From the IMG/VR virus record IMGVR_UViG_3300042691_055965, positions 124,001 through 188,000 of that record: a stretch of DNA of 64,000 bases; one strand, written 5' to 3'. The notes beneath the pieces are model-generated. The model made no database searches, was not told the origin of the DNA, and saw nothing but the letters and a program-made list of their open reading frames with translations. Shown one piece after another: positions 44,780 to 59,345 of the stretch. Position 1 is the first letter of the stretch. The number at the start of each line of letters is the position of its first letter. Position numbers and translations under genes: made by a program.

Positions 44780-47760
44780 TGGCTCAAAATAAATTCATAT
44801 GTCCAAAACCCGCACCAGTTGGTTCAGGAACTTTTTCTGATGATTTAGTTGGATTTCAAGTGGTTGCTGGTGGAGGGTTGACGCAAGGAAACTTTCAGTA
44901 TACTACGGCAGTTTTTGACAAGGTTAATCGAAGTTTTGGGACTGGAATTTTTTCAGAACCGTTCAACTTAGAAAACCTGAACATAGGGACAATAGAAGAA
45001 ACGAAGTTATTAATAAAAAAAAATTTTAGTGTTTATCCTAACTTTGATTTATCACAAATAACAAGTTTTTCTTTATATGGTTCACTTCAAAAAAGAATTT
45101 CAGCATCGGTAACAAAAATAATTAATTTTTTTCCTGCAGCAATTCAAATCGATCAACAAAACTATAGTTTAAATACTGGTTACACCGCTTTTAATATAGT
45201 TTATGATGGGGTAGCAGATGAAACGTCATTTGAAGTTGACGTACAGTTTTTTAAAAATCCATTCGATATTGATTACAGTATAAACGCTGCACAAAATATA
45301 TCCACAAGACCTTTTAAAATTAGTGATTTTAGAAACCTTACAAAAAACTACGAAGGGTATTCATTATACACTACAGATTTAACAACAGAATATCAAATTT
45401 TAGATTTTGTTCCAACACAAACATTAACTGCTGGAACAATTCCTATTATTGTTAAGGGTAAACCATTTTCATCAACAACCACAACCCAAACGTTAATATT
45501 GAAACCAAATAACTTGAACACTGAAAAAATATTTCAAGATGCGTTTGATGAAGTTGAAGATTATTTGTTAAATAGGAATGGGTTTCCTAAATATAGTGCG
45601 AAATTCAAATATCCTGACTACGATAGTAATGGGAACTATATTATGATTAATAATATTGTTACATGGAAGTTAGATGGTGTTTGGAACTTGGATATTGTCA
45701 CATCGAATTTTGACAATTATTTAACAACACTTCAAGATATTTCAGAAAGGTTAGATCAGTTTAAAACCAATTTGATAAGTAGGTTTTTAACTTCAGGTAG
45801 TTTGAAAGAATTTGATACTCCCGATCAAAGATTGGAAAAAGTCCTTCAAATTTATGGTAGAAGTTTTGATGAAACAAAAAAGTTTATTGATTCTTTAAGT
45901 AATATTACATCAGTAAATTATATTGTTGGAAACGATATTCCATCACAATTGTTAAGTAATTTAGCGAAAACATTAGGATGGAACACCGACATTTCACCAA
46001 TAACTAATGAAAAGTTATTGGAGTCAATTTTTACAACAACAAATGATGTAATTTATCCTGGACAATCTAAAGAACAAACACCCGCAGAATTAAATTATCA
46101 GTATTATAGAAACTTAATTTTAAATTCTGCTTTTTTATTCAAATCTAAAGGAACGAGAAAATCAATTGAATACATTCTAAGGATGGTAGGTGCGCCTGAA
46201 GCATTAATTGAATTCAATGAATATATTTACATTGCTGATCAGAAAATTTCAACGGATGAATTTTTCGAAGAATACATTACAATATCGGGTGGTACTAAAT
46301 ATGTTGAAACACCTGCACTTTTATCAAATAATACTTTTAAAATATGGGGAGTTCAATATACTGCATTTACAACAAATGGGCAAATTTTCAATGTAAATAC
46401 AGATTTACCTGACTACCCAATAGATACTGATACTGGTTTCCCTCAAAGAGCTGTTTACACTGATGATTATTTCTTTCAAAAAGGGTCAGGGTGGTTTGAA
46501 GTGACACCTGAACACCGTTCACCTGAAGAAATAAGTTATTCTACATCTGATTTAAATTCACAAATACCTGTCATAAATTCTGTCCTTACACCATTTACCT
46601 ATGGAAAAGAATATTTAGATAGGTATCGGTCTTTTCCATTTATGGATTTAGGATTCAACATTACAAAAGTAATTGATAACAAGAAAAGTTGGGTAACAAA
46701 TCAAGTTGGTTTACGAAAAAATCTTCAAGATTTAGCGGCTACAAATTATATAATTGAAGATGATAGACTTGCAATAAATGTTAAAAACATGGAAGTTTAT
46801 TTGAATATGGGACAAGGTATAACGTATGACATTTGGAATATGTCTTCCACATATGGTTATCCAATACCAAACAGTGGGTTTACTTCACCATATCCATCAC
46901 CAGGAAATATCGATTGGACATACATTGATCCTAAACCGAATCAAAAAACATTTTTTGAATTTGCTCAAAATTTCTTTAATAATTTCATTAATGTAAGAAA
47001 TAGACAATATATATCCGATGGTAAAACAGGCGGATACCCAACACTACAGTCAATATTTTGGAAATACATCAACAGTGATCAGTCGTTGAATATTCCAAAC
47101 AACGAATTCACATATCAAAAAATGATTGATTTTACTTTGAGTTTGGGTGACTATTGGGTTAGATTAGTTGAACAATTTGTTCCGGCAACCACTTTGTGGA
47201 ATACTGGACAAAAAATGGATAACTCTATTTTTCACAGACAAAAATATGTTTGGAGACGACAAAGAGGGTGTACCGTCACACCTCTTGTTGTTCCATGTTT
47301 TCCATGTACATATAATGGTGAACCATACACATATGATTGCATCGATCAAACTACTACTTGTGAATTACCATTATTCGATCCAATAGACGTGTTGACAGAA
47401 AGTACTTTACAAGTTACCAATAATCTAACAAATTGTAATTTCAATAACTTGGAATCCAATTGGTATGTTATAGTATCATTAACGAATTTGGTTACTAATC
47501 AAGAAGATATTTTAATTAATGAATATTTTTATACAGGATATGGTCCGAATGCTATAGATAATATAAACGGTAACCCATTGACATACTTTGATGTTATAAA
47601 TGCAATAGACAATAAACTACAGTATTTATATCAATACGGATTGAATTACTATTTTAGTGGTGGTTCACTAATAATTAGTAATTCTTCTTGTTATGCGGAT
47701 TTCACGGATAAACTACTAAATCTAAAAATAGGTTTGGACATTAATATTGTTTGTGCATAA
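44779..47760 (+). CDS. baseplate wedge protein (P2 gpI/T4 gp7-like core)
   Basis: LL..LA..LGW and LFKSKGTRKSIEYILR.VG motifs; W..LVEQFVPATT. Confidence 0.65.
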   Translation: MAQNKFICPKPAPVGSGTFSDDLVGFQVVAGGGLTQGNFQYTTAVFDKVNRSFGTGIFSEPFNLENLNIGTIEETKLLIKKNFSVYPNFDLSQITSFSLYGSLQKRISASVTKIINFFPAAIQIDQQNYSLNTGYTAFNIVYDGVADETSFEVDVQFFKNPFDIDYSINAAQNISTRPFKISDFRNLTKNYEGYSLYTTDLTTEYQILDFVPTQTLTAGTIPIIVKGKPFSSTTTTQTLILKPNNLNTEKIFQDAFDEVEDYLLNRNGFPKYSAKFKYPDYDSNGNYIMINNIVTWKLDGVWNLDIVTSNFDNYLTTLQDISERLDQFKTNLISRFLTSGSLKEFDTPDQRLEKVLQIYGRSFDETKKFIDSLSNITSVNYIVGNDIPSQLLSNLAKTLGWNTDISPITNEKLLESIFTTTNDVIYPGQSKEQTPAELNYQYYRNLILNSAFLFKSKGTRKSIEYILRMVGAPEALIEFNEYIYIADQKISTDEFFEEYITISGGTKYVETPALLSNNTFKIWGVQYTAFTTNGQIFNVNTDLPDYPIDTDTGFPQRAVYTDDYFFQKGSGWFEVTPEHRSPEEISYSTSDLNSQIPVINSVLTPFTYGKEYLDRYRSFPFMDLGFNITKVIDNKKSWVTNQVGLRKNLQDLAATNYIIEDDRLAINVKNMEVYLNMGQGITYDIWNMSSTYGYPIPNSGFTSPYPSPGNIDWTYIDPKPNQKTFFEFAQNFFNNFINVRNRQYISDGKTGGYPTLQSIFWKYINSDQSLNIPNNEFTYQKMIDFTLSLGDYWVRLVEQFVPATTLWNTGQKMDNSIFHRQKYVWRRQRGCTVTPLVVPCFPCTYNGEPYTYDCIDQTTTCELPLFDPIDVLTESTLQVTNNLTNCNFNNLESNWYVIVSLTNLVTNQEDILINEYFYTGYGPNAIDNINGNPLTYFDVINAIDNKLQYLYQYGLNYYFSGGSLIISNSSCYADFTDKLLNLKIGLDINIVCA

Positions 47761-50456
47761 TGGCTTGTATTTCGGGATTTACACTTGGTGGTTATTATAG
47801 TTATGTAGATTGTTGTGGTTTGGTTCAGGCGGGGGTTTCACCTGGACTTGAAAATGTTTGTGTAAGTGCATCAACTTCAGGAACATCAATTGGGGTTTTA
47901 CTTGATAGCGGTTCAACCTGTACGCAAAACTGTAATCAAGGACCTTTAAGTTATGTGTTTACTGTAACTGGGGTTTGTGGTAACCCATCAGGGACTGTAA
48001 CTATTCAATCTTTTGGTGGTATACCTCCGTATACTATTGATAATATTACTCCTGGAAGTTTATCAGCACAAACAAGTTCATCAGATATCACTTTTACTGG
48101 TTTAACAGGTGGTACTTATGTCTTTAGATTAAATGACTCATTAGGTATACAAAATAATGAAATTTTATTTAATGTAGAAATTTCTGATTGTTTTGTTGCG
48201 ACAATAAATAATACAGATGGAACAACTTGTGGTAGCCAAAATGGTAGTTTTTCTATAGATGTAACTTCTACTGCCGCACCATATAATATAGTTCTTTATA
48301 AAAATAATGCAATATTTTCGACATTTTTAACAAACACGGTTCCTTATAATGTTACATCATTAGATGAAGGAATATATTATGCAACTGTTTTTGATTATGG
48401 TATGGTAAGTGCCGTGACGGATAATGTTGTTATAAACCCAAGTAGTGGAACTACATTTGGTATATGGAAAGTTAATACATCTAACTGTGTACCTAATTCA
48501 GGAAAACTTGCGGTTACTGGATTGACAGGTAATGGACCTTATAGTTTTTTATGGTCTAATGGTGAAACAACACAAATTATTACTGGACTTACTGTCGGAA
48601 CTTACACAGTTACTGTCACTGATTTTTATGGTTGCGAAACTGTTGCGTCTGAAACGGTTGGTGTTGCTAATCCTTTAGGTGTAGGTTTAATTACTTCAGT
48701 TAACCCGTCTTGTTTTGATTCAAATGGTTCGATTACTGTTCAACTTACAGGAGGAACCGCTCCTTATACGATATCCGCTAATACAGGATATCAAACTTTT
48801 ACCTTAAGTGATACATTTACCGTACCAAATTTACCTACAGGTCCCTATAACATTTTGGTTAAAGATGCAAATCTTTGTCCTTTATTAGTAAACGCTTCTT
48901 TGACAACCGTAAATGGTTTTGACATTATAAGTACAAACATTACAAATACAACGTGTAATGGTAATGACGGTGAAGTGAATATTGTTTTAACTGGAATACC
49001 TCCATTCTTATTTCAATTAACAGCGCTTACAAACAATTCGATATCAACGCAATTTTCTTCAAATTTAAACACTACATTTAGTAATTTAAATTCGGGAAAT
49101 TATTTATTGTCCATTTCAGGGCAATCAAGTGGATGTGAATTTATACAACCAATAACTATTCAAAATCAACAGAATTTCCAAGTTACAGCAACGACAATTG
49201 ATAGTTCATGTGGAAGTGCTTCTGGATCGGTTATTATAGAAGTCGGAACAGGGTACACGTCACCTCTTGATTATTACCTTATTGACAATCAAAATACTCA
49301 ATCTATAATCGATTATCCTTTTTCATCTTTTACCTTCACATCTATTCTACCTGGAAATTATACAGTCCAAGTAGTTGATGGTAATAACTGTACCGTATCA
49401 ATTCCTGTCACAGTAGGTGCTGGTTCAAATTTTGTCAGTAACGTGATTACAACAAACTGTGTTTCAGGACAAGATGGTATTGCTCAAGTCGTCATATATG
49501 ATGGGGTGCCGCCTTTTACTTATAGTTGGCAAGGAGTATTATCCGCTCAAACAGGTTCTACTGTTACAAATTTAAGTGGTGGTACTTACACTGTTTCGGT
49601 TACAGATGCTAGTGGATGTACAAACTTTCATAATTTTACAATAGTATGTGGTTTCAATAGTTATAGTGGGTCGACAACATATCTTATATGTGAAAGAGAT
49701 TTTATCACAACAAGTGGAACTAAAAGAGGAATACCGGAAATGGTAAGTGAAGGTTTCTTGGATTTAACGACAGGGTACACTAATTGTATTTTAAATTCAG
49801 CGTCCGTGACTTGTCAAATTACATTGAACGGAAGTGCGTTTACACAAACAATAGTTTTTTGGAATGACGCATCATGGCAAAGTGCAATAGAAACAATATT
49901 AGGTAGTATTCCTGAAATAGGACAGTACGAAGTTAATTTATTAAATAATACTTTATATATAGAGTCAAATTGTCAGGGAGGAATTGATCCATTAGGTGAA
50001 ACTGATTTTACATTAGAATTGGTTGTAGATTATGACATTAGTTGTGCTGAAATTGCACCTACACCGACACCTACACCTACGCCAACACCTACGCCAACAC
50101 CTACACCTACGCCAACACCTACACCAACACCTTCGCCAACGCCTACTTATACATCAACAACGTGGTATTCTAATTCTGTTGTGTTTAGTACTGCAAACGC
50201 AACAAATCATTGTTTAACATTCCCTGATGATTGTAATGTGAATTTTTATACAAGTTCAGTGAGTTTAAATGTTGGTGATATTTTATATGATGATCCATTA
50301 CTGACTAATGATTCTGGAAATGTTGCGGTAAATTATGGACCATTTGGTGGTGGTTGGGGATGGATATATCTAACAGATACCTGTCCTATATCAAGTACAA
50401 TTTACCTCGTACAATTAAGAAGTAATGGTGAAATATTAGACATACAAACTTGTTAA
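47760..50456 (+). CDS. SprB-repeat virion decoration/fibre protein with a (PT)n tract
   Basis: Repeated C....G.I.....GG..PY...W.NG......GL..G.Y.V.VTD..GC units; ~15 PT units near the C-terminus; probable start ATG 47760 (TAATG overlap). Confidence 0.8.
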   Translation: MACISGFTLGGYYSYVDCCGLVQAGVSPGLENVCVSASTSGTSIGVLLDSGSTCTQNCNQGPLSYVFTVTGVCGNPSGTVTIQSFGGIPPYTIDNITPGSLSAQTSSSDITFTGLTGGTYVFRLNDSLGIQNNEILFNVEISDCFVATINNTDGTTCGSQNGSFSIDVTSTAAPYNIVLYKNNAIFSTFLTNTVPYNVTSLDEGIYYATVFDYGMVSAVTDNVVINPSSGTTFGIWKVNTSNCVPNSGKLAVTGLTGNGPYSFLWSNGETTQIITGLTVGTYTVTVTDFYGCETVASETVGVANPLGVGLITSVNPSCFDSNGSITVQLTGGTAPYTISANTGYQTFTLSDTFTVPNLPTGPYNILVKDANLCPLLVNASLTTVNGFDIISTNITNTTCNGNDGEVNIVLTGIPPFLFQLTALTNNSISTQFSSNLNTTFSNLNSGNYLLSISGQSSGCEFIQPITIQNQQNFQVTATTIDSSCGSASGSVIIEVGTGYTSPLDYYLIDNQNTQSIIDYPFSSFTFTSILPGNYTVQVVDGNNCTVSIPVTVGAGSNFVSNVITTNCVSGQDGIAQVVIYDGVPPFTYSWQGVLSAQTGSTVTNLSGGTYTVSVTDASGCTNFHNFTIVCGFNSYSGSTTYLICERDFITTSGTKRGIPEMVSEGFLDLTTGYTNCILNSASVTCQITLNGSAFTQTIVFWNDASWQSAIETILGSIPEIGQYEVNLLNNTLYIESNCQGGIDPLGETDFTLELVVDYDISCAEIAPTPTPTPTPTPTPTPTPTPTPTPTPSPTPTYTSTTWYSNSVVFSTANATNHCLTFPDDCNVNFYTSSVSLNVGDILYDDPLLTNDSGNVAVNYGPFGGGWGWIYLTDTCPISSTIYLVQLRSNGEILDIQTC
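50058..50147 (+). repeat. (Pro-Thr)n coding tract
   Basis: ccN-acN repeated ~15 times. Confidence 0.95.
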
Positions 50457-50457
50457 G

Positions 50458-50745
50458 ATGCCATATTCTATAGACATAACTTCTATGAGTGGTGGGTCAG
50501 CACCTGTCAGTTATTTCATTTGTGATGAAAATGGTAATAATTGTTCTTTTCTAGGTAATACTACAGGTGTTTATATATTACCCGCATTCTATCAACCTGC
50601 AACGACATTAATTGTTCAAGCAATAGACGGTAATAGTTGTTTATTATTTCAAGTAATAGTTTGTGCAGGACCTGAAACATTTTTACTTACAACTGAAGAT
50701 GGTTTTGTTCTTACAACAGAAGACGGTGACGGAATTTTATTCTAA
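50458..50745 (+). CDS. small virion adaptor-like protein (paralog family A)
   Basis: 95 aa; ICD.....C..L, D.N.C, C-terminal LTTEDG repeat. Confidence 0.7.
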   Translation: MPYSIDITSMSGGSAPVSYFICDENGNNCSFLGNTTGVYILPAFYQPATTLIVQAIDGNSCLLFQVIVCAGPETFLLTTEDGFVLTTEDGDGILF

Positions 50746-50766
50746 ATTTTATCATATTTATATTAT

Positions 50767-51051
50767 ATGATAATTCAAATCACAGGAGTAACAAGTGGAA
50801 CGTCGCCTTATGATGTCTACATTTGTGATCCAACAAATACAGGGTGTTTTTTGGTATCAGGGAGTACAGCGATACCACCAACTGTAACTATTGATAGTGA
50901 TTTATTTTTTCCTTATGAAAATATTGTCTATGTCAAGTTGATTGATGTTTTTGGTTGCACGTTAACAGAAACGGTTGTTTGTGGTGGAAAAATTTTCCAA
51001 GACGATTTTGGTTTTGCATTTATGGATGATACTTATTTTGTGTTTCAATAA
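50767..51051 (+). CDS. small virion adaptor-like protein (paralog family A)
   Basis: 94 aa; GTSPYDVYICD....C, KLID..GC, C-terminal K.FQD...F.FMD...F.FQ; TATTTATA at 50755. Confidence 0.75.
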   Translation: MIIQITGVTSGTSPYDVYICDPTNTGCFLVSGSTAIPPTVTIDSDLFFPYENIVYVKLIDVFGCTLTETVVCGGKIFQDDFGFAFMDDTYFVFQ

Positions 51052-51079
51052 ACTATTTTGATACTATTTATAAAATAAA

Positions 51080-52093
51080 ATGCCAATAACTTATCAATAT
51101 TTAACCGATAGAACTTTTGCACCATCAAGTGCAATTACACCTAATGCGTTAATTCATATTGTAGATCCTAATGACATTTCACAAAACCCAGACGGTTCGT
51201 CATATAAAGTAGAATTAACAAATTTAACATCCATATTTGGTTCAAGTGGTGACACATTCGTAACAGGTGGAACATATTCTGCAGGAACTGCAACATTCAC
51301 AAATAATACTGGAGGAACATTCAATGTAACAGGATTTACGTTGGCATCAACTGGTGGTACAAATATTAATACAATTATAAGTGGTTCTACTACTGTTATT
51401 AATTTGAATAATACCATAAATTTAACGGGAGTTACCGCAACTACAATAAGTGCAACAACATATCAAAATTTACCTGGTAGTTCATCGGCAAATTGTATAA
51501 CTGAACTTTTTGTGGGTAGAATAAAACCATGTACAACAACTTTCACTGTAAGTGGTGTTACAGTACTTACAAATAGTCCGGGTAAAAATCCTCTGAAAGT
51601 AGTTGCTTCTGGAAATAGTACTAGTGAACCTATTATGAGTGTTTCAGGAAGTAGTGGTGACTTATTTTCAGTAAAAGATAGTTTGACGGGAAATTTGTTT
51701 TCAGTAAACAACATTTCAGGAATCCCTATTATGGAAGTTTATGATAATAATAAAATGAAGTTGGGTTCATTTTCTTCACCAGCATCATATACTACAGTGA
51801 AATTTTTACCAACAACAGGTTTAACTGATGTCTTTTCTATTGATATTAGTGGAAATACGGGGGCGTGGTTTGACTATACTGTTGTAAATGCAATAACACC
51901 AAGTGCCAGGGCGGGACAAATTATGGCAATTTTTAGTGCAAATACAGTAAACTATGTAGAATCAACAACAAGTAGTATTGGAGTTACATCGGCAATTACT
52001 TTGAGTTTGTCTGCAAATTCAACAAACTGTATATTACAAACATCGGCAACCACTTTGGGGTGGGAAGTCAAAACAATAATAAGAAGTATTTAA
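51080..52093 (+). CDS. fibre-like virion protein (paralog family B N-terminus)
   Basis: N-terminal LTDRT...LIHIV..NDISQN..GSSY; Thr/Gly-rich shaft; TATTTATA at 51065. Confidence 0.7.
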   Translation: MPITYQYLTDRTFAPSSAITPNALIHIVDPNDISQNPDGSSYKVELTNLTSIFGSSGDTFVTGGTYSAGTATFTNNTGGTFNVTGFTLASTGGTNINTIISGSTTVINLNNTINLTGVTATTISATTYQNLPGSSSANCITELFVGRIKPCTTTFTVSGVTVLTNSPGKNPLKVVASGNSTSEPIMSVSGSSGDLFSVKDSLTGNLFSVNNISGIPIMEVYDNNKMKLGSFSSPASYTTVKFLPTTGLTDVFSIDISGNTGAWFDYTVVNAITPSARAGQIMAIFSANTVNYVESTTSSIGVTSAITLSLSANSTNCILQTSATTLGWEVKTIIRSI

Positions 52094-52102
52094 TTTTGAA
52101 TT

Positions 52103-52369
52103 ATGGACATTTTTGAAAACAGAAGATATATGATTATAAACTATAGTGAAATCGATAGTGTAGATTTTAGTCAAATATTTCAAACTTACAAAGACGAATT
52201 AAGACTATCGTTAGATGGTACAAAAACTGTAATTAAATGGGACGGGGACACACCAAGTTCAGTTGAATCATTGATATATAAAGACGGACCATATACCCAC
52301 AAAGATATTGTTACGATTATGGTTAGTGATGAATGGACTGATAACTCCGAAACCCCAAGAATTAGGTAA
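52103..52369 (+). CDS. hypothetical protein
   Basis: 88-aa ORF in the fibre cluster. Confidence 0.7.
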   Translation: MDIFENRRYMIINYSEIDSVDFSQIFQTYKDELRLSLDGTKTVIKWDGDTPSSVESLIYKDGPYTHKDIVTIMVSDEWTDNSETPRIR

Positions 52370-52380
52370 TATTTAAGAAA

Positions 52381-53115
52381 ATGATAAAAGTAGGAGCAAA
52401 AGAAATAGTAAAAGAAGGATTGGTATGTTTTATGGATCCTGCAAACACGAGTTCATATCAACCAAGTGGTACAACATATTATGATTTGTCTAGTTTTGCT
52501 GCAAAAGCCGTTTTTCAAAATTTTGATACAAATAATAACTTCGATCCGAGTGACGGTGGTGGTAGTATAATTTTTGATGGTGTAGATGATAGTATTCGTG
52601 TTTTTACATATGGTAGTGTAGGTATTACTAATAGTGCTGAAACTGACTCCTATTTATTTACTGATGAAGTAACATTAGAGGCGTTTGTAAAACCAACATC
52701 GTTTACTAGTCAACCTAACATAATAGGTAAAGGTACAAATTTAGGATATAGATGTAGATTTACGTCTGATCAAAGATTTTGGTTATATTCTTCTAGTGGT
52801 GCTAGTATTAATAACATTCAAACCGCATCCAATTTGATAAACCCAAATGAATGGGTTCATGTTGTTGCGGTTTTTAGTCAGTCGGGTCTTTTTGCTTATG
52901 TAAATGGAGTGCTGCAGGCATCAAATTCACAACCATTTTTACCCGACATATTAAACCCAACGAGTATAGCTTGTGTATTACATTTTGGTAGATTTTGTAG
53001 TTCTGGTGAACTATTTGAAGGTAAAATGGGTATTATAAGGGTTTACCATGCGGCTCTTTCCGCTGATCAAGTACTATCAAACTTCAATGCTGATAGGGAT
53101 AGATACGGAATATAA
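52381..53115 (+). CDS. LamG/concanavalin A-like lectin domain protein
   Basis: GLV...DPAN..SY..SG....DLS, FDGVDD, TLEAFVKP, W.HVVAV, YVNG, F.G.MG..RVY..ALS...V..NF. Confidence 0.88.
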   Translation: MIKVGAKEIVKEGLVCFMDPANTSSYQPSGTTYYDLSSFAAKAVFQNFDTNNNFDPSDGGGSIIFDGVDDSIRVFTYGSVGITNSAETDSYLFTDEVTLEAFVKPTSFTSQPNIIGKGTNLGYRCRFTSDQRFWLYSSSGASINNIQTASNLINPNEWVHVVAVFSQSGLFAYVNGVLQASNSQPFLPDILNPTSIACVLHFGRFCSSGELFEGKMGIIRVYHAALSADQVLSNFNADRDRYGI

Positions 53116-53178
53116 AATTATATATTTCTTTATACAATCTAACATTTATTAATTTTTCTATTTTCATAACATTCTAAT

Positions 53179-54375
53179 ATGAAAATATTTGTACAAATTG
53201 CATCTTATCGTGATCCTGAACTTTTACCAACTATTAGGGATTGTATCAATAAGGCAAAATACCCTGAAAATTTAACTTTTGGTATCTGTTGGCAACGTGA
53301 CGAAACAGAAACTTTGGAAGAATTTTTAAATGATTATAGATTTAGAATATTAGATTATCATTGGAGTGAAAGTAAAGGGCTGTGTTGGGCTCGAAGTGAA
53401 ATACAAAAACTTTGGAAAGGGGAAGAATATACTCTACAATTAGATTCACATCATAGGTTTTTGAAAAATTGGGATGAAGAATTAATCGAAATGATGAACA
53501 TGACAGGTTCGAAAAAACCAATAATTTCAACATATGCTGGAATGTATCAACCATCAGACGACAAGTTATTAAATTTTGAACCTTATAAAATGGTGGCATC
53601 TAATTTCACACCAGGTGGTACTATACTTTTTAGACCTCACGCAATCCCAAACTGGGAAACATTGGAAAAACCAATACCTGCAAGATTTGTCAGTGGACAC
53701 TTTTTTTTCACAATTGGTAAACACTGTGAAGAATATAAATATGATCCAAACATATATTTTGCTGGTGATGAAATTAGTCTATCGATTCGTTCATTTACAT
53801 TAGGTTATGATTTATTTCACCCATATAAGACAATTATTTGGCACGAATACACAAGGGAAGGTAGAACAAAACACTGGTCGGATTTCAATGAGGAAAATAA
53901 AAATAAAGGTGTTGTTGAAAAACAATGGTGGGAAATGGATAATGAATCCAAAAGAAGATTGAGACATATGTTGCAAGAAGAAGATAATAATATTGATCTT
54001 GGAATTTATGGGTTAGGAAATGAAAGGACACATAAAGAATACGAAGATTATGCTGGTATAAATTTTAGACTTAAAAAACTTCACCCCGAAACGTTAAAAG
54101 GTACAAATCCACCAATTAATGATACTACAGAATGGTATTTGGAAGAAGAAAAAACATATACCTATACTTTAGAAATACCCAAAACTGAAAATTTTAAATT
54201 CATATATATTGGTATAGAAAATGAAAAAGGTGATGTTTTATACAGACAAGATTTATTAGAATATCAAAATAAATTAGACATAACAATTAAAAGTTTTTCC
54301 AAACCACACAAATGGATTTATTGGGTAAACGATATCGATGGGAATTGGATTAATAGGGTAGATACAAATTTATGA
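53179..54375 (+). CDS. GT60-like glycosyltransferase (Skp1/polypeptide alpha-GlcNAc transferase family)
   Basis: IFVQIASYRDPEL..TI, SKG.CWAR, LQLDSHHRF..NWD, F.GDEI..SIR.FT.GYD, WHEY. Confidence 0.85.
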   Translation: MKIFVQIASYRDPELLPTIRDCINKAKYPENLTFGICWQRDETETLEEFLNDYRFRILDYHWSESKGLCWARSEIQKLWKGEEYTLQLDSHHRFLKNWDEELIEMMNMTGSKKPIISTYAGMYQPSDDKLLNFEPYKMVASNFTPGGTILFRPHAIPNWETLEKPIPARFVSGHFFFTIGKHCEEYKYDPNIYFAGDEISLSIRSFTLGYDLFHPYKTIIWHEYTREGRTKHWSDFNEENKNKGVVEKQWWEMDNESKRRLRHMLQEEDNNIDLGIYGLGNERTHKEYEDYAGINFRLKKLHPETLKGTNPPINDTTEWYLEEEKTYTYTLEIPKTENFKFIYIGIENEKGDVLYRQDLLEYQNKLDITIKSFSKPHKWIYWVNDIDGNWINRVDTNL

Positions 54376-55169
54376 AAATAGGAGCATTTTATCAGTCAGG
54401 ACACAAGTTAGTTGCGTGTTATAAAGCATTGGAACAATTAAGAAAAGTATATCCTAATATACCTGTTGCTTTATATGAAGACGGTTCTAAAATATTGGAA
54501 CAGGTAGCAAAAAAATTTAATTGTGATTATAAATGGATTGAACAACAAGGGACAAACCACCCTACATCTGGAAGGGTTTTTGTTAAAGAAGGTGGGCAAA
54601 TTGATTGGCTACGAAGAATCTATGATGCTTGTTTGACAACACTAAAAGATGTTGAATGGGTGGTACACTACGAAGACGACGTTTGGTGTAGGTTTGAAAT
54701 AACCAAACCACCAAAATTTGATATTTCAGGAGCCAATGGTCCATTATATACAAATGAATTATATTCATATTTAAAAAATAGATTTGATGTTTACGATGAG
54801 TCAAGACATCATTGGAGTGAAAATGGTTCTTTACAAAGTTACGGTGCCTGTGGTGGTGCTATTTTTAATAGAGAAAAATTTATCTACATATTTGAAAATA
54901 TCGACAAAGTTCCGTGGGATTATATCTATAAATTGGATACCAGACCGATTGAGTGGTGTGATGCAACGCTTTCGTTTTTATTTCAGTATTTTGGATTTAC
55001 TAGTGGGGTATGGGAAGATTGGGCACAATACGATAGTAAAAATATAGGTAATTGGTGGGATAAAAGTGGTTGGTCGGTTCCTATGGAAGAACAACCTAAT
55101 GTTGCTTTTATTCATGCGTATAAACATTATTATTGTTATAAACCTGAAGATATTGAAATAGATTTTTAA
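54372..55169 (+). CDS. putative GT-A glycosyltransferase
   Basis: LRKVYP..P..LY.DG, VVHYEDDVW (DxD-like), GACGG..F, D..LS..F, IH.YK; coupled to GT60 gene (ATGA overlap). Confidence 0.7.
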   Translation: MKIGAFYQSGHKLVACYKALEQLRKVYPNIPVALYEDGSKILEQVAKKFNCDYKWIEQQGTNHPTSGRVFVKEGGQIDWLRRIYDACLTTLKDVEWVVHYEDDVWCRFEITKPPKFDISGANGPLYTNELYSYLKNRFDVYDESRHHWSENGSLQSYGACGGAIFNREKFIYIFENIDKVPWDYIYKLDTRPIEWCDATLSFLFQYFGFTSGVWEDWAQYDSKNIGNWWDKSGWSVPMEEQPNVAFIHAYKHYYCYKPEDIEIDF

Positions 55170-55197
55170 AAAAATTTATGCAAATCAGATTTTCAAT

Positions 55198-55205
55198 TAT
55201 TTATA
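55198..55205 (+). promoter_or_regulatory. TATTTATA element
   Basis: Exact motif 11 nt before GTG 55217. Confidence 0.6.
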
Positions 55206-55216
55206 TATAAAAAAGA

Positions 55217-56845
55217 GTGCCAAATTTATTATTTGAAGGTTGTTGTTACGAGGGTTATCAGTATTTCACTGATGAAGCAGCTTGGATTGCAACTGGTGGA
55301 ACCGCGACTACAGGACAAACATATCATTTTTCAGGTGACCCAATAGTTCCCGATGGTTGTTATACTATAGTATCGGCATTCACATCAGGTTTTACATCTG
55401 TATCATTTACAAATTTAGATGGTGTTTATACAACACAAACAGGATGTACCGATTCTTTGTGTTTGACAGGTGTTTGTTGTAGTAATGATGTTTGCATTAA
55501 CATTTCGGTTTCAACATATAGTGCGTATAGCGGTAATTATGTTGTTGCTGGAAGTTATAATTCTTACCCTTATTGGACAGGTGCAACACAACCTGGGTAT
55601 ATTGGGTTCAATGGTACAAATTGGTGTCTTTCTGATTCACTAACCGGAACTTGTATTTTTTATGGGTCGAACCCAACATTATCAACTTGCCCTGATTTAG
55701 ATACTTCAGTTTATAATACAGGAATTTGTCCACCTGTACCAACACCATTCGATCCGTGTGGTGCATTTGATTTTGATGTTTTAGTTGCTTGTGATATACC
55801 AACACCAACTCCAACACCAACACCGACACCAACACCTACACCGACTCCCACACCAAGTCCAACACCTAATTTATGTTCAGGATTTTCTGTGTCAATATCT
55901 TTTAGTGCTACAACACCTACACCAACACCAACACCAACACCTACACCAACGCCTACGGTTTATCCTTATCCAATAACTGGACAAAGTGTGACTTTTGTTA
56001 TTGACGAAGGTTATTTTAATTGTGTTTCAATAAAACAATTACAGGATTGTGATAATGGTGAAACATATTTAGTTGCCGATCCTTTAATTTTCCAATTATC
56101 GGCAATAACCACAGGCACTACGTTCTTGGGCGCTATAAATGGAGAATTCAAGTGTGTAACATATGTGGGTGATGTTTTGGGAAGTCCATCCGATTTGTTA
56201 ACATTTATATCACTTACATACAGTGGGGATTGTAGTTCATGTATCGCGCCAACACCAACTCCAACACCTACACCAAGCCCAACACCAACACCGACACCTA
56301 CACCGACACCTACACCGACACCAACATATAGTGCGAACACATCATTCGTGTTTACATCTTGTACATCAAATTCGATGATAATTCAAAGTTTGATTCCACC
56401 TACTAACATTTCTGTTGGTAACGTTGTAAAAAATAGTTCAGGAAATTGTTTCACTTATATTGGTTATTTTGTGAATTATACTCCACCATCTGGGTTTATT
56501 TGGTCGACTATAAATTCATTTACGGGTGTTACTGCAACAACTTACACGACTTGTTTAGAGTGTTTGACACCAACACCAACACCTACACCATTATTCAATA
56601 CATATAACGGTAAAGGTGAATTCGGAGTATCGTGTCCTGTTTGTGAATTGACAAATGGTGGTACAAATGTGACTTTCTATAGGTCTTATAGTACTTTATC
56701 TTTACAGACAGGGGATTATATTTATGAAGATACTGCACTTACCATACCTGTAATATTATCATACATTAAGTACGGTGGTAAAATATACAGTGTTGATAGT
56801 AATGGTATGATAACAGAATTTTGTATAGTAAACGGTAATTGTTAA
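55217..56845 (+). CDS. Cys-rich virion protein with four (PT)n mucin-like tracts
   Basis: 542 aa, GTG start; small Cys-paired domains separated by PT tracts. Confidence 0.8.
55799..56590 (+). repeat. four (Pro-Thr)n coding tracts
   Basis: Tracts at about 55799-55867, 55910-55957, 56249-56326 and 56567-56590. Confidence 0.95.
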
Positions 56846-56846
56846 T

Positions 56847-57146
56847 ATGGCGACATTTGTTACAGTAAACACAGCAACAGGACAGTTCCCAATAAATGTT
56901 TGGGTTTGTAATGATTGTACCACGGGGGCTACAAATATTTGTCAATACATAGACACAATTGATAATGTTGGTGAAATTCCGTTCACATTTCAACTACCAA
57001 CAATTTATGAAACAGCACTTTCATATTCCATCAAATTTATTGACAGTTTAGGATGTGAAGTGTGTGATGCTTATTCGACTTATAAACAATTCCAAGATGG
57101 TGATCCATTTATTTTCATGGACGGCACAACTTATGAATTTCAATAA
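56847..57146 (+). CDS. small virion adaptor-like protein (paralog family A)
   Basis: 99 aa; G..P..VWVC, KFIDSLGC, C-terminal KQFQDGDPFIFMDGTTYEFQ. Confidence 0.75.
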   Translation: MATFVTVNTATGQFPINVWVCNDCTTGATNICQYIDTIDNVGEIPFTFQLPTIYETALSYSIKFIDSLGCEVCDAYSTYKQFQDGDPFIFMDGTTYEFQ

Positions 57147-57166
57147 ACATTATATATATTAATTAA

Positions 57167-57694
57167 ATGGCAAGATTAACAGATAAAACAACAGCAACTG
57201 CAGTAACCCAAAGTAGTTTAATTCACATTGTGAATACTAATGATGTTACACAAAATAGTGCGGGTTCATCGTATAGAGCCGATTTAGGACAAGTAGCAAA
57301 TGCGATTGGCGGGTATCAATATTATAGTGCCGTAACAATTACATCTTCAGATATATTAACTTCTAATTCAGTTCCTTTTGAAATATTACCTAATCCTGGT
57401 GCTAATAGTTACTATGATGCTAAATTTATTATGGAATATACGTATAATACAACAGGATACGTTTCGGGTGCTGAAAGTGTTATTTCAGACGGAGTAAATA
57501 GTGTTTATGCTTTGGGTGATTTGGCAAATTTTGTTACAGATACCGTAAATATCGTGCAAAGTATTGAAACCTTACAACCCGCAAAAATGCAACCAAACAA
57601 TCCTTTGTATTTCTTCACAGAAGTCGCGGATCCAACTACAGGTGATGGTGAAATACTACTTAAAATTTGGTATACAATAAGAACATTCGGATAA
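57167..57694 (+). CDS. short fibre-like virion protein (paralog family B N-terminus)
   Basis: LTDKT...LIHIVNTNDVTQN..GSSY matches the N-terminus of 51080. Confidence 0.72.
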   Translation: MARLTDKTTATAVTQSSLIHIVNTNDVTQNSAGSSYRADLGQVANAIGGYQYYSAVTITSSDILTSNSVPFEILPNPGANSYYDAKFIMEYTYNTTGYVSGAESVISDGVNSVYALGDLANFVTDTVNIVQSIETLQPAKMQPNNPLYFFTEVADPTTGDGEILLKIWYTIRTFG

Positions 57695-57695
57695 T

Positions 57696-59345
57696 ATGGC
57701 AGGATATACTGGAAATACTTGTGATATTTTAACCATCTTCCCAATGGGTTTGATTTGTAGTTCAACAAATGCGTATACTCCATTTACAAATGATGGTGCG
57801 ATAACATTGTATATTACAGGAGGTACACCACCGTATACAATAAATTGGAGTAATGGTGCTCATTCACAAAATTTAACAAACTTACAATCAGGAAATTACA
57901 CTGCCACGGTAATTGATTACTATGGGGATTTTACAGCAACAACTACTTGTAATGTTGGATTTGATACTTTTTATTTAGAAAAATTCACAAATTGTTTGGA
58001 TTCAAACAATCAAATTTATTTTTTAGCAAATATTAATAATCAATACCAAGTTGATAAAGTTTATTCTTTAAGTTCACAACTTGGATGTTGGATTAGTGAA
58101 GGTTTACTTTTATATAGTGCTGAAACATATAGTAATTTTACAGCAACAACGGTTTCGGGACCTTTTGATACTTGTCCTGAATGTTTACCAACAGTACCTG
58201 TGATTTTTAATACTTCTGGATTGTGTTTGACACTAACATCTTTTAATGTTGTAACACAAACACAATATTATTCAGGAGGTACAATCAATGGATATCCGTC
58301 ATGGACATCCAACACATCGAATGAAGTTATTTATTTTGATAACACACAATCTAAATGGAAAGTTTCTGGATGGACGGGTGGAGGTATCCCACAACTTCAA
58401 TCAATACAAAGTCCACCAATCGGAGCTTGGACTGTAGTAGGGTTACCACAGTTATTGGCAGGTAATACTGCGGTTGCCGTAACACAAGGGGATTGTCAAG
58501 CAGTAATTGTTGCAAATATCAGTAGTACACCACCAAGTTGTGAAGGTGCAACCGATGGTTATATAAATGTAACATCGGTTATTGGCGGTACACCACCATA
58601 TACATATTCATTAGTGAATGATCAAAATTTTTATCAAATATCAAATATATTCAATGGTTTGTCAGAAGGTGGTTATACAGTATATGTTCAAGACGTTTTT
58701 GGAAATATCACTATAAGTCAAGTTAATTTGAATTCTTTAGTTAGCCCAACATTATATACGTTGAATTTAGTTGTGCAACAAGTAAATCTTGGTAACAACT
58801 CGACAACAAACCAAACTAGAAATTGGACTTACCAAGTTACAGTATCACCAGCACTTCCAATAGGTAAACAGATCAATTTTGATATAACACACGTATCAAC
58901 ATCAATTTATGGAACAACCAACAATGGTTCACCTGTATTATCTTATACCCAATCAACAGGAACTACAGGTGGTGGACAATACTTAACAAGTACAACACCA
59001 ACAACCACTTCTACTTCAGCAACAACTGTTGCATGTACCACATTAAATAATTACACACAACACGTAACAACTACAACCATAAGACAATATAACGCAAGGA
59101 TAACAGGTACATTTGGAACGGATAGTGTTTTTGGTAACGTCACACAAAGTGTAACTGTTATAAATGGTGGAACACCATGTGCAGTATTCGGTAATATTAA
59201 TGATAGTGTTTCAATAACAAATATACAATTGGTAAACCAAGCACCGTGTGAATTGGTGAACACAACCGTTCAACCCGTGTCTTTCGGTGTTTCTAAAACG
59301 GGAACACCTGGAATAGTTGGAAGTAATGTAAATGTGAGTGGATAA
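57696..59345 (+). CDS. SprB-repeat, Thr-rich virion protein
   Basis: DGAITL.ITGGTPPYTINWSNG....NL..G.Y..TV.D and PSC.G..DG.I.V....GGTPPYTYSL. Confidence 0.75.
   Translation: MAGYTGNTCDILTIFPMGLICSSTNAYTPFTNDGAITLYITGGTPPYTINWSNGAHSQNLTNLQSGNYTATVIDYYGDFTATTTCNVGFDTFYLEKFTNCLDSNNQIYFLANINNQYQVDKVYSLSSQLGCWISEGLLLYSAETYSNFTATTVSGPFDTCPECLPTVPVIFNTSGLCLTLTSFNVVTQTQYYSGGTINGYPSWTSNTSNEVIYFDNTQSKWKVSGWTGGGIPQLQSIQSPPIGAWTVVGLPQLLAGNTAVAVTQGDCQAVIVANISSTPPSCEGATDGYINVTSVIGGTPPYTYSLVNDQNFYQISNIFNGLSEGGYTVYVQDVFGNITISQVNLNSLVSPTLYTLNLVVQQVNLGNNSTTNQTRNWTYQVTVSPALPIGKQINFDITHVSTSIYGTTNNGSPVLSYTQSTGTTGGGQYLTSTTPTTTSTSATTVACTTLNNYTQHVTTTTIRQYNARITGTFGTDSVFGNVTQSVTVINGGTPCAVFGNINDSVSITNIQLVNQAPCELVNTTVQPVSFGVSKTGTPGIVGSNVNVSG

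What the first reader, a model, noticed from the sequence alone, without database searches (positions are those of the whole stretch)
47760..59345. Candidate phage-encoded mucin-type O-glycosylation system for virion proteins
Seen: two coupled glycosyltransferase genes (53179-54375, 54372-55169) lie inside the virion fibre/decoration cluster. Their neighbours are a protein with ~15 PT units (47760), a protein with four (PT)n tracts directly downstream (55217) and a LamG lectin directly upstream. Established: the first enzyme carries GT60 family motifs (IF..IASYRD, DSH.RF...WD, F.G[DE]EI). Characterised GT60 enzymes in Dictyostelium and trypanosomatids transfer alpha-GlcNAc to hydroxyproline or to Thr/Ser of mucin-like peptides and are related to polypeptide GalNAc transferases. 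Inference: an initiating plus an elongating enzyme glycosylate the (PT)n stalks, stiffening or protecting them or giving the virion a glycan coat, so the substrate is protein rather than DNA or host LPS.
Basis: partly seen in the sequence, partly recalled or inferred. Interest (0 to 1): 0.9.

Follow-up and report, generated by a model that had tools for sequence, protein, structure and literature searches.

The report
Phage sugar-tagging genes beside Pro-Thr fibres
An uncultured giant freshwater phage carries, in the middle of its tail-fibre genes, a pair of sugar-adding enzymes related to those that start mucin glycosylation in eukaryotes, next to fibre proteins with long proline-threonine linkers; comparisons across hundreds of related loci suggest the enzymes decorate those linkers, which would be a new kind of phage virion glycosylation, but no experiment has shown it yet.

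Summary
Gene 53179-54375 is a clear PF11397/GT60 enzyme, and its model resembles polypeptide GalNAc-transferases. Gene 54372-55169 overlaps it by 4 nt and matches no HMM, but it models as a GT-A transferase (nearest GT6) with an invariant EDD motif. All five (PT)n tracts of the 64 kb window lie in the two flanking fibre-type proteins.

Evidence for a protein substrate:
- In 57 of 61 distinct related loci, the slot upstream of the 55217-protein homologue holds a glycosyltransferase. The families differ (two GT60 clades, GT29, GT34, GT25, GT9-like, GT-D-like).
- In unrelated phages, PT-tract ORFs are enriched within three genes of GT60 (8/101 vs 2/213).
- Of viral loci picked only for a (PT)10 tract, 7/120 carry GT60, against 0/234 for (PA)10 or (PE)8 controls.
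- Some of those loci read PT-protein, prolyl-hydroxylase-type oxygenase, radical-SAM, GT60.
- In Burkholderiales T6SS clusters, GT60 accompanies VgrG spikes with Pro-Thr/Ser tails.

Caveats:
- About 60% of independent GT60 contexts have no PT gene nearby.
- The XacN1 homologue sits beside DNA polymerase.
- The LamG gene is not a conserved part.
- Nothing is shown biochemically.

Verdict: a likely virion O-glycosylation cassette, a new variant of a known kind.

The parts
47751..50456 (+). SprB-repeat fibre/decoration protein (901 aa from TTG 47751; ATG at 47760). A (PT)15 linker joins the body to a ~100-aa C-terminal domain. Proposed acceptor.
   Evidence: PF13573 SprB repeats, E 9.5e-18. PT tract found. 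Homologues in related loci also carry PT tracts of variable length. The C-terminal domain weakly resembles that of the 55217 protein (E 6e-4).
50058..50147 (+). (PT)14(PS)1 tract, 30 aa
   Evidence: Six-frame scan. Mixed synonymous codons.
52381..53115 (+). LamG / ConA-like domain protein. An accessory neighbour, probably a structural protein and not a conserved part of the cassette.
   Evidence: PF13385, E 1.2e-20. phrog_8510 'virion structural protein'. Found only in L001/L002/L068 and, distantly, in L066.
53179..54375 (+). GT60-family (PF11397) GT-A glycosyltransferase. Soluble, with no signal peptide or TM segment. Catalytic domain ~1-300 plus a variable six-strand beta domain ~325-397. 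Proposed initiating polypeptide HexNAc-transferase.
   Evidence: PF11397, E 2.1e-67. AF2 model pLDDT 82, with the top 28 PDB matches all polypeptide GalNAc-transferases (GalNAc-T2 E 1.4e-8). Invariant D89-S90-H91, G196/E198 and W221-H222-E223-Y224-T225-R226.
54372..55169 (+). Second GT-A fold glycosyltransferase (GT6-like by structure), overlapping the GT60 stop by 4 nt. Proposed elongating enzyme. Optional in relatives.
   Evidence: No HMM hit. AF2 pLDDT 87 with Foldseek matches to GT6 (E 4e-8). Invariant EDD motif and H248. Directly downstream of a GT60 gene in every locus fetched from IMG/VR and on the P0194 contig. In the same gene cluster, two genes after GT60, in L148. The exception is L149.
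55217..56845 (+). 542-aa modular protein with four (PT)n linkers between small Cys-containing domains. Proposed main acceptor.
   Evidence: Tracts at 55799-55867, 55916-55957, 56249-56326 and 56570-56590. Homologues in 61 distinct loci keep the tracts at the same relative positions with varying length. 57 of the 61 have a glycosyltransferase-family gene directly upstream.

Best explanation
This is a phage-encoded protein O-glycosylation cassette that acts on virion fibre proteins.

Proposed mechanism:
- The GT60 enzyme (53179-54375) is a soluble, Mn-dependent GT-A transferase of the same superfamily as polypeptide GalNAc/GlcNAc-transferases.
- It is made late, together with the baseplate and fibre genes.
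- In the host cytoplasm it transfers a HexNAc from a host UDP-sugar onto hydroxyl groups in the (PT)n linkers of the neighbouring proteins. UDP-GlcNAc is the most likely donor. The main target is 55217-56845, and probably also 47751-50456.
- The residues modified are most likely Thr/Ser, because no prolyl hydroxylase was found in the window.
- The coupled GT-A enzyme (54372-55169) adds a second sugar.
- The result would be extended, protease-resistant, glycan-coated stalks that display the small terminal domains.

Across the lineage this position is a swappable 'glycan-type' slot, so related phages would display different glycans.

Shown: gene identities, folds, motifs, gene order and the statistical association with PT tracts.
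Inferred: the substrate, the sugar, the linkage, the order of action and the benefit to the phage.
For: (1) Family and fold.
- PF11397 at E 2e-67.
- The top 28 Foldseek PDB hits are all polypeptide GalNAc-transferases.
- Invariant DxH motif, a 'FAGDE' motif and WHEYTR.
- GT60 enzymes are pp-alpha-GlcNAc transferases acting on Thr-rich mucin peptides, or on Skp1 hydroxyproline (PMC8724618, PMC6939170, PMC3769586).

(2) All PT tracts of the window lie in the two flanking fibre-type genes. In related DNA away from the cluster, 0 of 409 ORFs have one.

(3) Non-orthologous replacement in a fixed slot. In 61 distinct loci fetched through the conserved 733-aa neighbour, the gene(s) just upstream of the PT-protein homologue are:
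- GT60 clade A, with or without ORF2;
- GT60 clade B (39-48% identical), usually with an HtrL/YibB-family protein;
- GT29-like;
- GT34;
- GT25;
- GT9-like;
- GT-D-like plus a sugar kinase.
Pfam was run on one representative per group. L068 has a 93%-identical neighbour gene but only a 47%-identical GT60, which points to a cassette swap.

(4) Unrelated phage contexts. PT-tract ORFs make up 8/101 of ORFs within three genes of GT60 and 2/213 further away (Fisher p = 0.002). The PT protein is directly adjacent in L029, L034, L042, L053 and L058.

(5) Reverse test. Viral loci chosen only for a (PT)10 DNA pattern: 7/120 contain GT60 (5 outside this lineage). Loci chosen for (PA)10 or (PE)8: 0/234. 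The amount of DNA and the GC content were similar. p = 4.6e-4, or 0.004 without this lineage.

(6) L264, L288 and L299 share the order PT-protein, PF13640 2OG-oxygenase, radical-SAM/SPASM, GT60. This is a protein-modification cassette.

(7) L181 is a crAss-like region in a Saprospiraceae genome. It reads muzzle proteins with up to 157 aa of PT, then GT60, then a GT32-domain protein.

(8) Burkholderiales T6SS clusters carry GT60, and the VgrG spike in all 16 examined ends in a Pro-Thr/Ser repeat tail.
Against: - There is no biochemical or proteomic evidence, and no cultured relative.
- In 11 of 17 independent non-syntenic GT60 contexts, no PT-tract ORF lies within three genes.
- In XacN1 and Xoo-sp13 the homologue sits in a replication module next to a carbamoyltransferase. 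This fits a different substrate for that clade.
- Some slot occupants (GT9-like, GT25, HtrL/YibB) belong to families usually linked to LPS core synthesis.
- Enterobacterial VgrGs with Pro-Thr tails have no GT60 within 10 kb, so such tails do not require GT60.
- Within the lineage, the PT tracts and the GT slot are both nearly universal. Their co-occurrence there is therefore largely one phylogenetic event.
- That the flanking proteins are virion proteins rests on domain and PHROG names only.
Confidence: 0.6

Rival explanations
1. Host-surface remodelling. The cassette is a moron placed near the fibre genes. It glycosylates host LPS, capsule, teichoic-like polymers or host surface proteins during infection, for example to mask receptors so that progeny or competitors do not adsorb to infected or lysed cells.
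For: GT clusters in aquatic phages are usually read this way (PMC12801897, read). Some slot occupants are from LPS-associated families: GT9-like, GT25 and HtrL/YibB. Fibre-gene regions are common sites for accessory genes.
Against: This does not explain why GT60 is specifically enriched next to Pro-Thr repeat proteins and not next to Pro-Ala or Pro-Glu ones. It does not explain the oxygenase plus radical-SAM/SPASM protein-modification partners. The best structural matches are polypeptide transferases. No flippase, polymerase or undecaprenyl-linked-pathway genes were seen in the cassette.
Confidence: 0.15
2. The cassette glycosylates proteins, but not at the PT tracts. Targets could be other sites on the fibres, capsid or tail. 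The PT tracts would be plain flexible linkers that merely share the hypervariable fibre region.
For: Mycobacteriophage GTs modify the C-termini of capsid and tail-tube subunits, not PT linkers (Freeman 2023, as cited in PMC12619734 and PMC10877033). Most independent GT60 contexts lack a nearby PT gene.
Against: The PT-specific reverse association. The GT gene lies directly next to the PT protein in many unrelated loci. Characterised GT60 acceptors are Thr/Pro-rich peptides (PMC3769586).
Confidence: 0.12
3. DNA hypermodification. The enzymes glycosylate modified bases (hydroxymethyl- or hydroxy-pyrimidines) in phage DNA to evade restriction.
For: Phage GT-A and GT-B enzymes do this (bioRxiv 10.1101/2023.12.21.572611; PMC13326640). 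The XacN1 and Xoo-sp13 GT60 homologue lies beside DNA polymerase, RNaseH, NUDIX and a carbamoyltransferase. One ORF2 homologue (L149) sits among nucleotide-metabolism genes.
Against: In this lineage the genes lie inside the late structural module. No hydroxymethylase, 5mYOX or thymidylate-synthase-like gene appeared among the ~40 window ORFs scanned. The known DNA GT-A enzymes resemble base-J glucosyltransferase and TarP, not GT27 or GT60. The PT-tract association has no explanation under this reading.
Confidence: 0.05
4. Chance neighbours with no functional link between the GT genes and the PT proteins.
For: Within the lineage the arrangement could simply be inherited.
Against: Repeated non-orthologous GT replacement at the same slot. 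Independent associations in unrelated phages, in a crAss-like element and in T6SS clusters.
Confidence: 0.08

Closest known systems
CAZy GT60 polypeptide alpha-GlcNAc-transferases of protists (Dictyostelium Gnt2/pp-alphaGlcNAcT, T. cruzi TcOGNT) and the cytoplasmic Skp1 Hyp-GlcNAc-transferase Gnt1
   Same: Same Pfam family (PF11397), DxH motif, GT-A fold related to GT27, and Pro/Thr-rich repeat acceptors encoded next door. Like Gnt1, the phage enzyme is soluble and cytoplasmic, with no membrane anchor. In other phage loci a PF13640 oxygenase precedes GT60, as PhyA precedes Gnt1 in the Skp1 pathway.
   Different: The enzyme is encoded by a phage of bacteria. It carries a variable ~90-aa C-terminal beta domain. 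Its proposed targets are virion fibre linkers, not Golgi mucins or Skp1. Donor, anomeric linkage and acceptor residue are all untested.
Animal mucin-type O-glycosylation initiated by GT27 polypeptide GalNAc-transferases
   Same: These are the best structural matches (GalNAc-T2, T1, T4, T12, PGANT9B). Both act, or are proposed to act, on dense Ser/Thr/Pro tandem repeats, and both are followed by elongating GTs.
   Different: Sequence identity is only 11-16%. There is no ricin-type lectin domain and no secretory pathway. The enzyme does not match the GT27 family models.
Mycobacteriophage virion glycosylation (Freeman et al. 2023, Cell Host Microbe; cited in PMC12619734 and PMC10877033)
   Same: Phage-encoded glycosyltransferases next to structural genes that decorate virion proteins.
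   Different: Different GT families, different hosts (Actinobacteria) and different sites (C-termini of capsid and tail-tube subunits). That case was shown experimentally. This one is not.
Giant-virus autonomous glycosylation (chloroviruses, Mimivirus fibrils; PMC9614988, PMC5408694)
   Same: Virus-encoded cytoplasmic GTs that build glycans on capsid or fibril proteins. The BFVD matches include Megaviridae and Pandoravirus GlcNAc-transferase-like proteins.
   Different: Those are eukaryotic viruses, with N-linked or atypical linkages and different enzymes.
O-glycosylated Pro-Thr linkers of secreted bacterial and fungal cellulases (from memory, not checked here)
   Same: (PT)n linkers between folded modules carry O-glycans that extend the linker and protect it from proteases.
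   Different: Those are glycosylated during or after secretion by membrane-bound mannosyltransferases. Here the enzyme would be a soluble cytoplasmic GT-A.

Membership tests
GT60 / PF11397 glycosyltransferase family | Sequence match to the family model above the curated threshold | tested here: met
   228.5 bits against a cut-off of 21, E 2.1e-67. CAZy/dbCAN itself could not be run.
GT60 / PF11397 glycosyltransferase family | GT-A fold with a DxH metal-binding motif and a downstream His, related to GT27 | tested here: met
   AF2 model with Foldseek: the top 28 PDB hits are ppGalNAc-Ts. D89-x-H91 and H222 are invariant in 22 homologues. The assignment of metal ligands is by analogy only.
GT60 / PF11397 glycosyltransferase family | UDP-GlcNAc donor with retention to give an alpha-linked GlcNAc | not testable with these tools
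   Requires an enzyme assay and NMR or glycosidase analysis.
GT60 / PF11397 glycosyltransferase family | Polypeptide acceptor (Thr/Ser of mucin-like repeats, or hydroxyproline) | tested here: inconclusive
   Only genomic association supports this. It comes from the PT-tract enrichment tests and from protein-modification partner genes. Counter-examples without PT neighbours exist.
Mucin-type O-glycosylation system | Initiating polypeptide HexNAc-transferase plus Ser/Thr/Pro tandem-repeat acceptor | tested here: met
   Both are encoded side by side. This is met at gene-content level only.
Mucin-type O-glycosylation system | Elongating glycosyltransferase(s) acting on the first sugar | tested here: inconclusive
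   ORF2 has a GT-A fold with an EDD motif and co-travels with GT60. Its activity and the order of action are unknown. It is absent in about a third of syntenic relatives.
Mucin-type O-glycosylation system | Glycan actually present on the repeat domain | not testable with these tools
   Needs glycoproteomics or a lectin blot.
GT6 family (for ORF2) | Sequence membership (family HMM) and the GT6 DxD and acceptor-site residues | tested here: not met
   No Pfam or NCBIfam hit. The structural similarity is only TM ~0.5 at 12-16% identity. ORF2 is filed as 'GT-A fold, GT6-like', not as a GT6 member.
Phage virion glycosylation (mycobacteriophage type) | Phage-encoded GTs adjacent to structural genes | tested here: met
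   The cassette lies between SprB-repeat and fibre-type genes, downstream of the gp25 and wedge genes.
Phage virion glycosylation (mycobacteriophage type) | Glycans demonstrated on virion subunits | not testable with these tools
   There is no isolate. Nearest cultured relatives share only a distant tail sheath.

The most novel reading that the evidence does not exclude
GT60 enzymes may define a widespread, unrecognised prokaryotic 'mucin-type' glycosylation system. In it, soluble cytoplasmic polypeptide HexNAc-transferases glycosylate Pro-Thr/Ser repeat linkers and tails on contractile or injection machinery built in the cytoplasm. Candidate targets seen here are phage fibres, crAss-like muzzle proteins and T6SS VgrG spikes. 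In some phages the first step would be prolyl hydroxylation, as in the eukaryotic Skp1 pathway. The elongating enzymes sit in a rapidly swapped slot, so closely related phages would display different glycan 'serotypes'. One such cassette (L148: GT60, GT25-like, GT6-like, GT11) hints at blood-group-like structures.
Probability: 0.35. Interest if true: 0.85.

Novelty: new variant of a known kind. Interest (0 to 1): 0.72.

Why it matters
Virion glycosylation by phage-encoded enzymes has so far been shown only for mycobacteriophages. Glycosyltransferase clusters in aquatic phages are routinely annotated as host-surface or DNA-modifying.

If the GT60 cassette does glycosylate Pro-Thr linkers, several things follow:
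- A very abundant environmental gene family would gain a function. More than 7,000 90%-identity clusters were found in public metagenomes.
- Many 'hypothetical' PT-repeat fibre proteins would be glycoproteins.
- The variable GT slot would be a new axis of phage surface diversity. It could affect adsorption, protease resistance, grazing and recognition.
- The chemistry that starts mucin and Skp1 glycosylation in eukaryotes would be linked to phages and bacterial secretion spikes. That bears on the origin of those pathways.
- It would offer soluble bacterial-cytoplasm enzymes for making mucin-like glycoproteins.

Tried and rejected
- Nucleotide search of the cassette against GenBank phages found nothing. 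The conserved 733-aa neighbour has no protein match there either. So no annotated relative could be used.
- PDB sequence searches with both enzymes found nothing. Fold comparison was needed.
- Promoter and terminator scans of 47-62 kb were no better than shuffles, so they say nothing about operon structure.
- NCBIfam hits of the PT proteins (InlK, SslE, S-layer) are low-complexity matches far below threshold and were ignored.
- BLAST between ORF2 and the HtrL/YibB-type protein that occupies the same position after clade-B GT60 shows no similarity. They are treated as non-homologous.
- The idea that the phage belongs to the published 'moraphage' lineage (PMC12619734) could not be verified and is not claimed.
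- The T6SS association was first taken as strong independent support. A control then showed that enterobacterial VgrGs with similar tails lack GT60 within 10 kb. It was downgraded to 'GT60 implies tail, not the reverse'.
- PT-tract hits in high-GC bacterial loci whose reading frame was not confirmed by a domain hit (for example L190, L152) were not counted. In such DNA, alternative frames of GV- or R-rich repeats also read as PT.
- The Freeman 2023 paper could not be opened and is cited only through papers that cite it.

Full report
**What the window is.** The 64 kb window has about 32% GC and almost all genes on the + strand.
- It encodes a tail sheath (2694-5912), a tail-tube-like protein and a T4-type baseplate protein.
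- It also encodes gp32-like, UvsX-like and DnaB-like proteins, a ribonucleotide reductase, a gp25-like protein (31489), a baseplate wedge protein (31961) and a primase.
- It is identical to part of a 229 kb IMG/VR contig (L001). This is therefore an uncultured T4-like jumbo myophage.
- No GenBank phage matches the cassette at nucleotide level. The tail sheath finds only distant relatives, such as Microcystis and Flavobacterium phages at about 30% identity.
- SprB repeats and DUF5122 domains hint at a Bacteroidota host, but the host was not established.

**Checking the observation.**
- *First enzyme.* Gene 53179-54375 matches PF11397 'Glycosyltransferase (GlcNAc)', the Pfam model of CAZy GT60, at E 2.1e-67. 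It also matches a PHROG annotated as glycosyltransferase at E 4e-98.
- *Fold of the first enzyme.* Its AlphaFold model (pLDDT 82) finds polypeptide GalNAc-transferases (GalNAc-T2, T1, T4, T12, PGANT9B) as its top 28 PDB matches. The protein begins directly with the first beta-strand of the fold. It has no signal peptide or membrane anchor, so it should be cytoplasmic.
- *C-terminal domain.* Residues ~325-397 form a separate six-strand beta domain that varies between relatives. Some have a clade-A catalytic domain joined to a clade-B-type C-terminal domain, and two lack the domain altogether.
- *Second enzyme.* Gene 54372-55169 overlaps the first by 4 nt. It has no hit in Pfam, PHROGs, NCBIfam or PDB sequences. 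A 28-sequence alignment shows an invariant E-D-D after a hydrophobic strand and an invariant C-terminal His. Its model (pLDDT 87) is a GT-A fold, closest to the GT6 histo-blood-group transferases and Bacteroides BoGT6a (E 4e-8, TM about 0.5). 'Two coupled glycosyltransferases' is therefore right, but the second is recognisable only by structure.
- *PT tracts.* The tracts are exactly as described. They are the only ones in any frame of the window and use mixed synonymous codons.
- *LamG.* The LamG assignment is correct as a domain (PF13385).

**Within-lineage comparison.** I used the GT60 protein to fetch 66 IMG/VR loci.
- In 40 of them the whole fibre module is syntenic. In every one of those, GT60 lies immediately upstream of the homologue of the 55217 protein. 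ORF2 lies between them in 26 of the 40, many of which are near-duplicates.

To avoid selecting on the GT, I then fetched 79 loci through the conserved 733-aa gene 59372-61573. These contain 61 distinct versions of the PT protein. Clustering the upstream genes and scanning one representative per cluster gave the following slot occupants:
- GT60 in 47 loci. These fall into two clades only 39-48% identical to each other.
- Clade B is followed by an HtrL/YibB-family protein in 13 of the 18 distinct clade-B loci. In three of those 13 loci a DUF3431 protein and two unknown proteins lie in between.
- A GT29 (sialyltransferase-family) gene on the opposite strand in 3 loci.
- GT34 in 1 locus.
- GT25 plus an HtrL fusion in 1 locus.
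- A GT9-like gene in 3 loci.
- A GT-D-like gene plus a PfkB kinase in 2 loci.
- Only four loci had no recognisable GT. One had a methyltransferase, one a small unknown protein, one nothing, and one was at a contig end.

L068 shares 93% identity in the 733-aa gene but only 47% in GT60, so the cassette has been exchanged between close relatives. A fixed position filled again and again by unrelated glycosyltransferases, next to the same PT-linker protein, argues that what is selected is 'a glycosyltransferase here'. LamG and the small gene 52103-52369 occur only in L001, L002 and L068, and distantly in L066. They are not core components.

**Across unrelated genomes.** The other 26 GT60 loci share no flanking genes with the window. 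Their GT60 is nevertheless 53-78% identical in most cases, with two at 36-37%.
- They reduce to about 17 independent contexts.
- In six contexts a PT-tract ORF lies within three genes of GT60. It is directly adjacent in L029, L034, L042, L053 and L058. One example is a 674-aa protein with 148 aa of PT.
- In L066, GT60 is fused into a 1268-aa protein.
- Counting ORFs, 8/101 near GT60 carry a PT tract against 2/213 further away (p = 0.002). The figure is 0/409 in 333 kb of control DNA.

**The reverse test.** I searched IMG/VR for a degenerate DNA pattern encoding (PT)10, and as controls for (PA)10 and (PE)8. Each search returned about 1.09 Mb in 114-120 loci of similar GC content.
- GT60 homologues occur in 7/120 PT loci, five of them outside this lineage.
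- They occur in 0/234 control loci.
- p = 4.6e-4, or 0.004 when this lineage is excluded.
- Pro-Ala and Pro-Glu repeats are comparable linkers but lack hydroxyl groups. The specificity for Pro-Thr is what the glycosylation hypothesis predicts.

**Partner genes.** Three of the (PT)10-selected loci (L264, L288, L299) share one gene order. It is PT-rich protein, PF13640 2OG-Fe(II) oxygenase, radical-SAM/SPASM enzyme, then a short GT60.
- From memory, PF13640 is the family that holds prolyl 4-hydroxylases.
- Homologues of that oxygenase occur in 9/120 PT loci, 1/120 PA loci and 0/114 PE loci. None occurs in the window or its relatives.
- An oxygenase followed by GT60 mirrors the eukaryotic Skp1 pathway of PhyA then Gnt1 (PMC6939170). 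SPASM radical-SAM enzymes typically modify peptides.
- These cassettes point to the adjacent PT protein as substrate. They also suggest hydroxyproline linkage in those phages. In the window's phage no oxygenase was found, so Thr/Ser linkage is more likely.

**ORF2 in other genomes.**
- On one 169 kb contig (the P0194 place, no DNA held) it forms a two-gene unit with GT60.
- In L148 the cluster reads GT60, an unknown gene, a GT25-like gene, ORF2, then GT11.
- In L149 it occurs without GT60, among nucleotide-metabolism genes.

**Bacterial genomes.** A scan of one genome per species found GT60 homologues at 32-67% identity in Verrucomicrobia, Burkholderiales, Saprospiraceae, Gemmatimonadota and others. 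Three contexts were examined.
1. *L181 (Saprospiraceae).* This is a crAss-like region. It reads muzzle-type proteins (one with 157 aa of PT), then GT60, then a 1087-aa GT32-domain protein, then a muzzle C-terminal-domain protein.
2. *T6SS clusters in about two dozen Burkholderiales and allies.* GT60 lies in the order TssA, fimbrial-like protein, GT60..., PAAR, VgrG, TssM.
   - Every VgrG examined ends in a long repeat tail: (PT)n of up to ~118 aa, or TPEP, EEPPPS, PEPSDE or DETP repeats.
   - One further case was found starting from VgrG (L587).
   - The control was mixed. Three tail-less VgrG loci have no GT60. Three enterobacterial clusters with tail-bearing VgrGs also have none within 10 kb.
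   - So GT60 implies a tail, but a tail does not imply GT60.
3. *Verrucomicrobium sp.* The cluster reads GT60, GT32, sulfotransferase, GT25, sulfotransferase, with no PT gene nearby.

**Evidence on the other side.**
- XacN1 and Xoo-sp13, two of only four cultured phages with a homologue, place it beside DNA polymerase, RNaseH, NUDIX and a carbamoyltransferase, with no PT gene. That clade may have another substrate.
- The known DNA-modifying phage GT-A enzymes resemble base-J glucosyltransferase and TarP, not GT27.
- Most independent GT60 contexts lack a nearby PT gene.
- Some slot occupants come from LPS-type families.
- That the flanking proteins are part of the virion is inferred from position and domain names only.
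- No paper in the searchable library mentions PF11397 in phages or GT60 in a relevant phage context.

**Conclusion.** The most likely reading, at about 0.6, is a virion protein O-glycosylation cassette. A cytoplasmic GT60 polypeptide HexNAc-transferase would start glycans on the Pro-Thr linkers of the adjacent fibre or decoration proteins. A GT-A partner would extend them. The position behaves as a swappable glycan-type slot.
- Characterised GT60 enzymes use UDP-GlcNAc and Mn2+ on Thr-rich peptides such as KPPTTTTTTTTKPP (PMC3769586) and on mucin-type domains in Dictyostelium (PMC8724618). That makes GlcNAc-alpha-Thr the default guess.
- Phage-encoded virion glycosylation is already known from mycobacteriophages and giant viruses, so the concept is not new.
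- What is new: the enzyme family, the acceptor type, the variable slot, and the links to hydroxylase cassettes and to T6SS spikes.
- I rate it a new variant of a known kind and of high interest, but it is entirely dependent on a straightforward biochemical test that has not been done.

Noticed in passing
L199:5596-17206 (Ralstonia sp. 25C chromosome); also L198, L202, L204, L206, L213, L215-L218, L220-L222, L227, L228, L587: A GT60 homologue is embedded in a conserved T6SS cluster (TssA, fimbrial-like protein, GT60, PAAR, VgrG, TssM). The VgrG spike ends in a long Pro-Thr/Ser repeat tail, up to ~118 aa of (PT)n. Enterobacterial orthologous clusters have similar tails but no GT60 within 10 kb.
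   Followed up: partly
L264:841-5801, L288:3-4208, L299:5350-8835: A recurrent phage cassette: PT-rich protein, PF13640 2OG-Fe(II) oxygenase (prolyl-hydroxylase-type), radical-SAM/SPASM enzyme, short GT60. It resembles the eukaryotic Skp1 Hyp-GlcNAc pathway. The oxygenase occurs in 9/120 (PT)10 loci against 1/234 control loci.
   Followed up: partly
L181:307-13867 (Saprospiraceae MAG, 3 Mb contig): A crAss-like muzzle-protein region, probably a prophage or a mis-binned phage. It reads a 1845-aa and a 673-aa PT-rich protein, then GT60, then a 1087-aa GT32-domain protein.
   Followed up: partly
L148:3860-8665: A cluster of GT60, an unknown 398-aa protein, a GT25-like gene, an ORF2 homologue (GT6-like fold) and GT11 (fucosyltransferase family). 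This enzyme set could build a histo-blood-group-like glycan. No PT tract lies within 7 kb.
   Followed up: no
L146:7989-11706 and L147:7992-11687 (Xanthomonas phages XacN1, Xoo-sp13): The GT60 homologue lies directly upstream of a 765-aa carbamoyltransferase, in the DNA polymerase/RNaseH/NUDIX module. It may be a different (nucleic-acid or small-molecule) pathway.
   Followed up: no
window 50458-52093 and 56847-57694: The fibre region is built from duplicated modules. The small paralogues 50458, 50767 and 56847 (94-99 aa) share a C-terminal acidic/aromatic motif. The proteins at 51080 and 57167 share an N-terminal 'LIHIV..ND..QN..GSSY' segment. The GT cassette sits between the two module copies.
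   Followed up: no
window 53179-54375, residues ~300-398; alignment A2: The C-terminal beta domain of GT60 is mosaic between clades. L033 and L046 combine a clade-A catalytic domain with a clade-B-type C-terminus. The domain is absent in L052 and L053. It may be an acceptor-recognition module.
   Followed up: partly
L154:7998-13332 (Verrucomicrobium sp. BvORR106): A bacterial chromosomal cluster of GT60, GT32, sulfotransferase, GT25 and sulfotransferase, with an RHS-repeat protein nearby. It suggests sulfated O-glycans started by GT60 in Verrucomicrobia.
   Followed up: no
window 10588-16617, 16926-23363, 33876-40196: Three giant ORFs of 2009, 2145 and 2106 aa. The last carries DUF5122 beta-propeller repeats. 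The first two have no Pfam hits.
   Followed up: no
window 56011-56340 (- strand): The 109-aa ORF with (GV)n repeats is the antisense reading of the PT tract at 56249-56326 and is almost certainly not a gene. In high-GC genomes the same artefact can make false PT or GV/RR tracts.
   Followed up: yes
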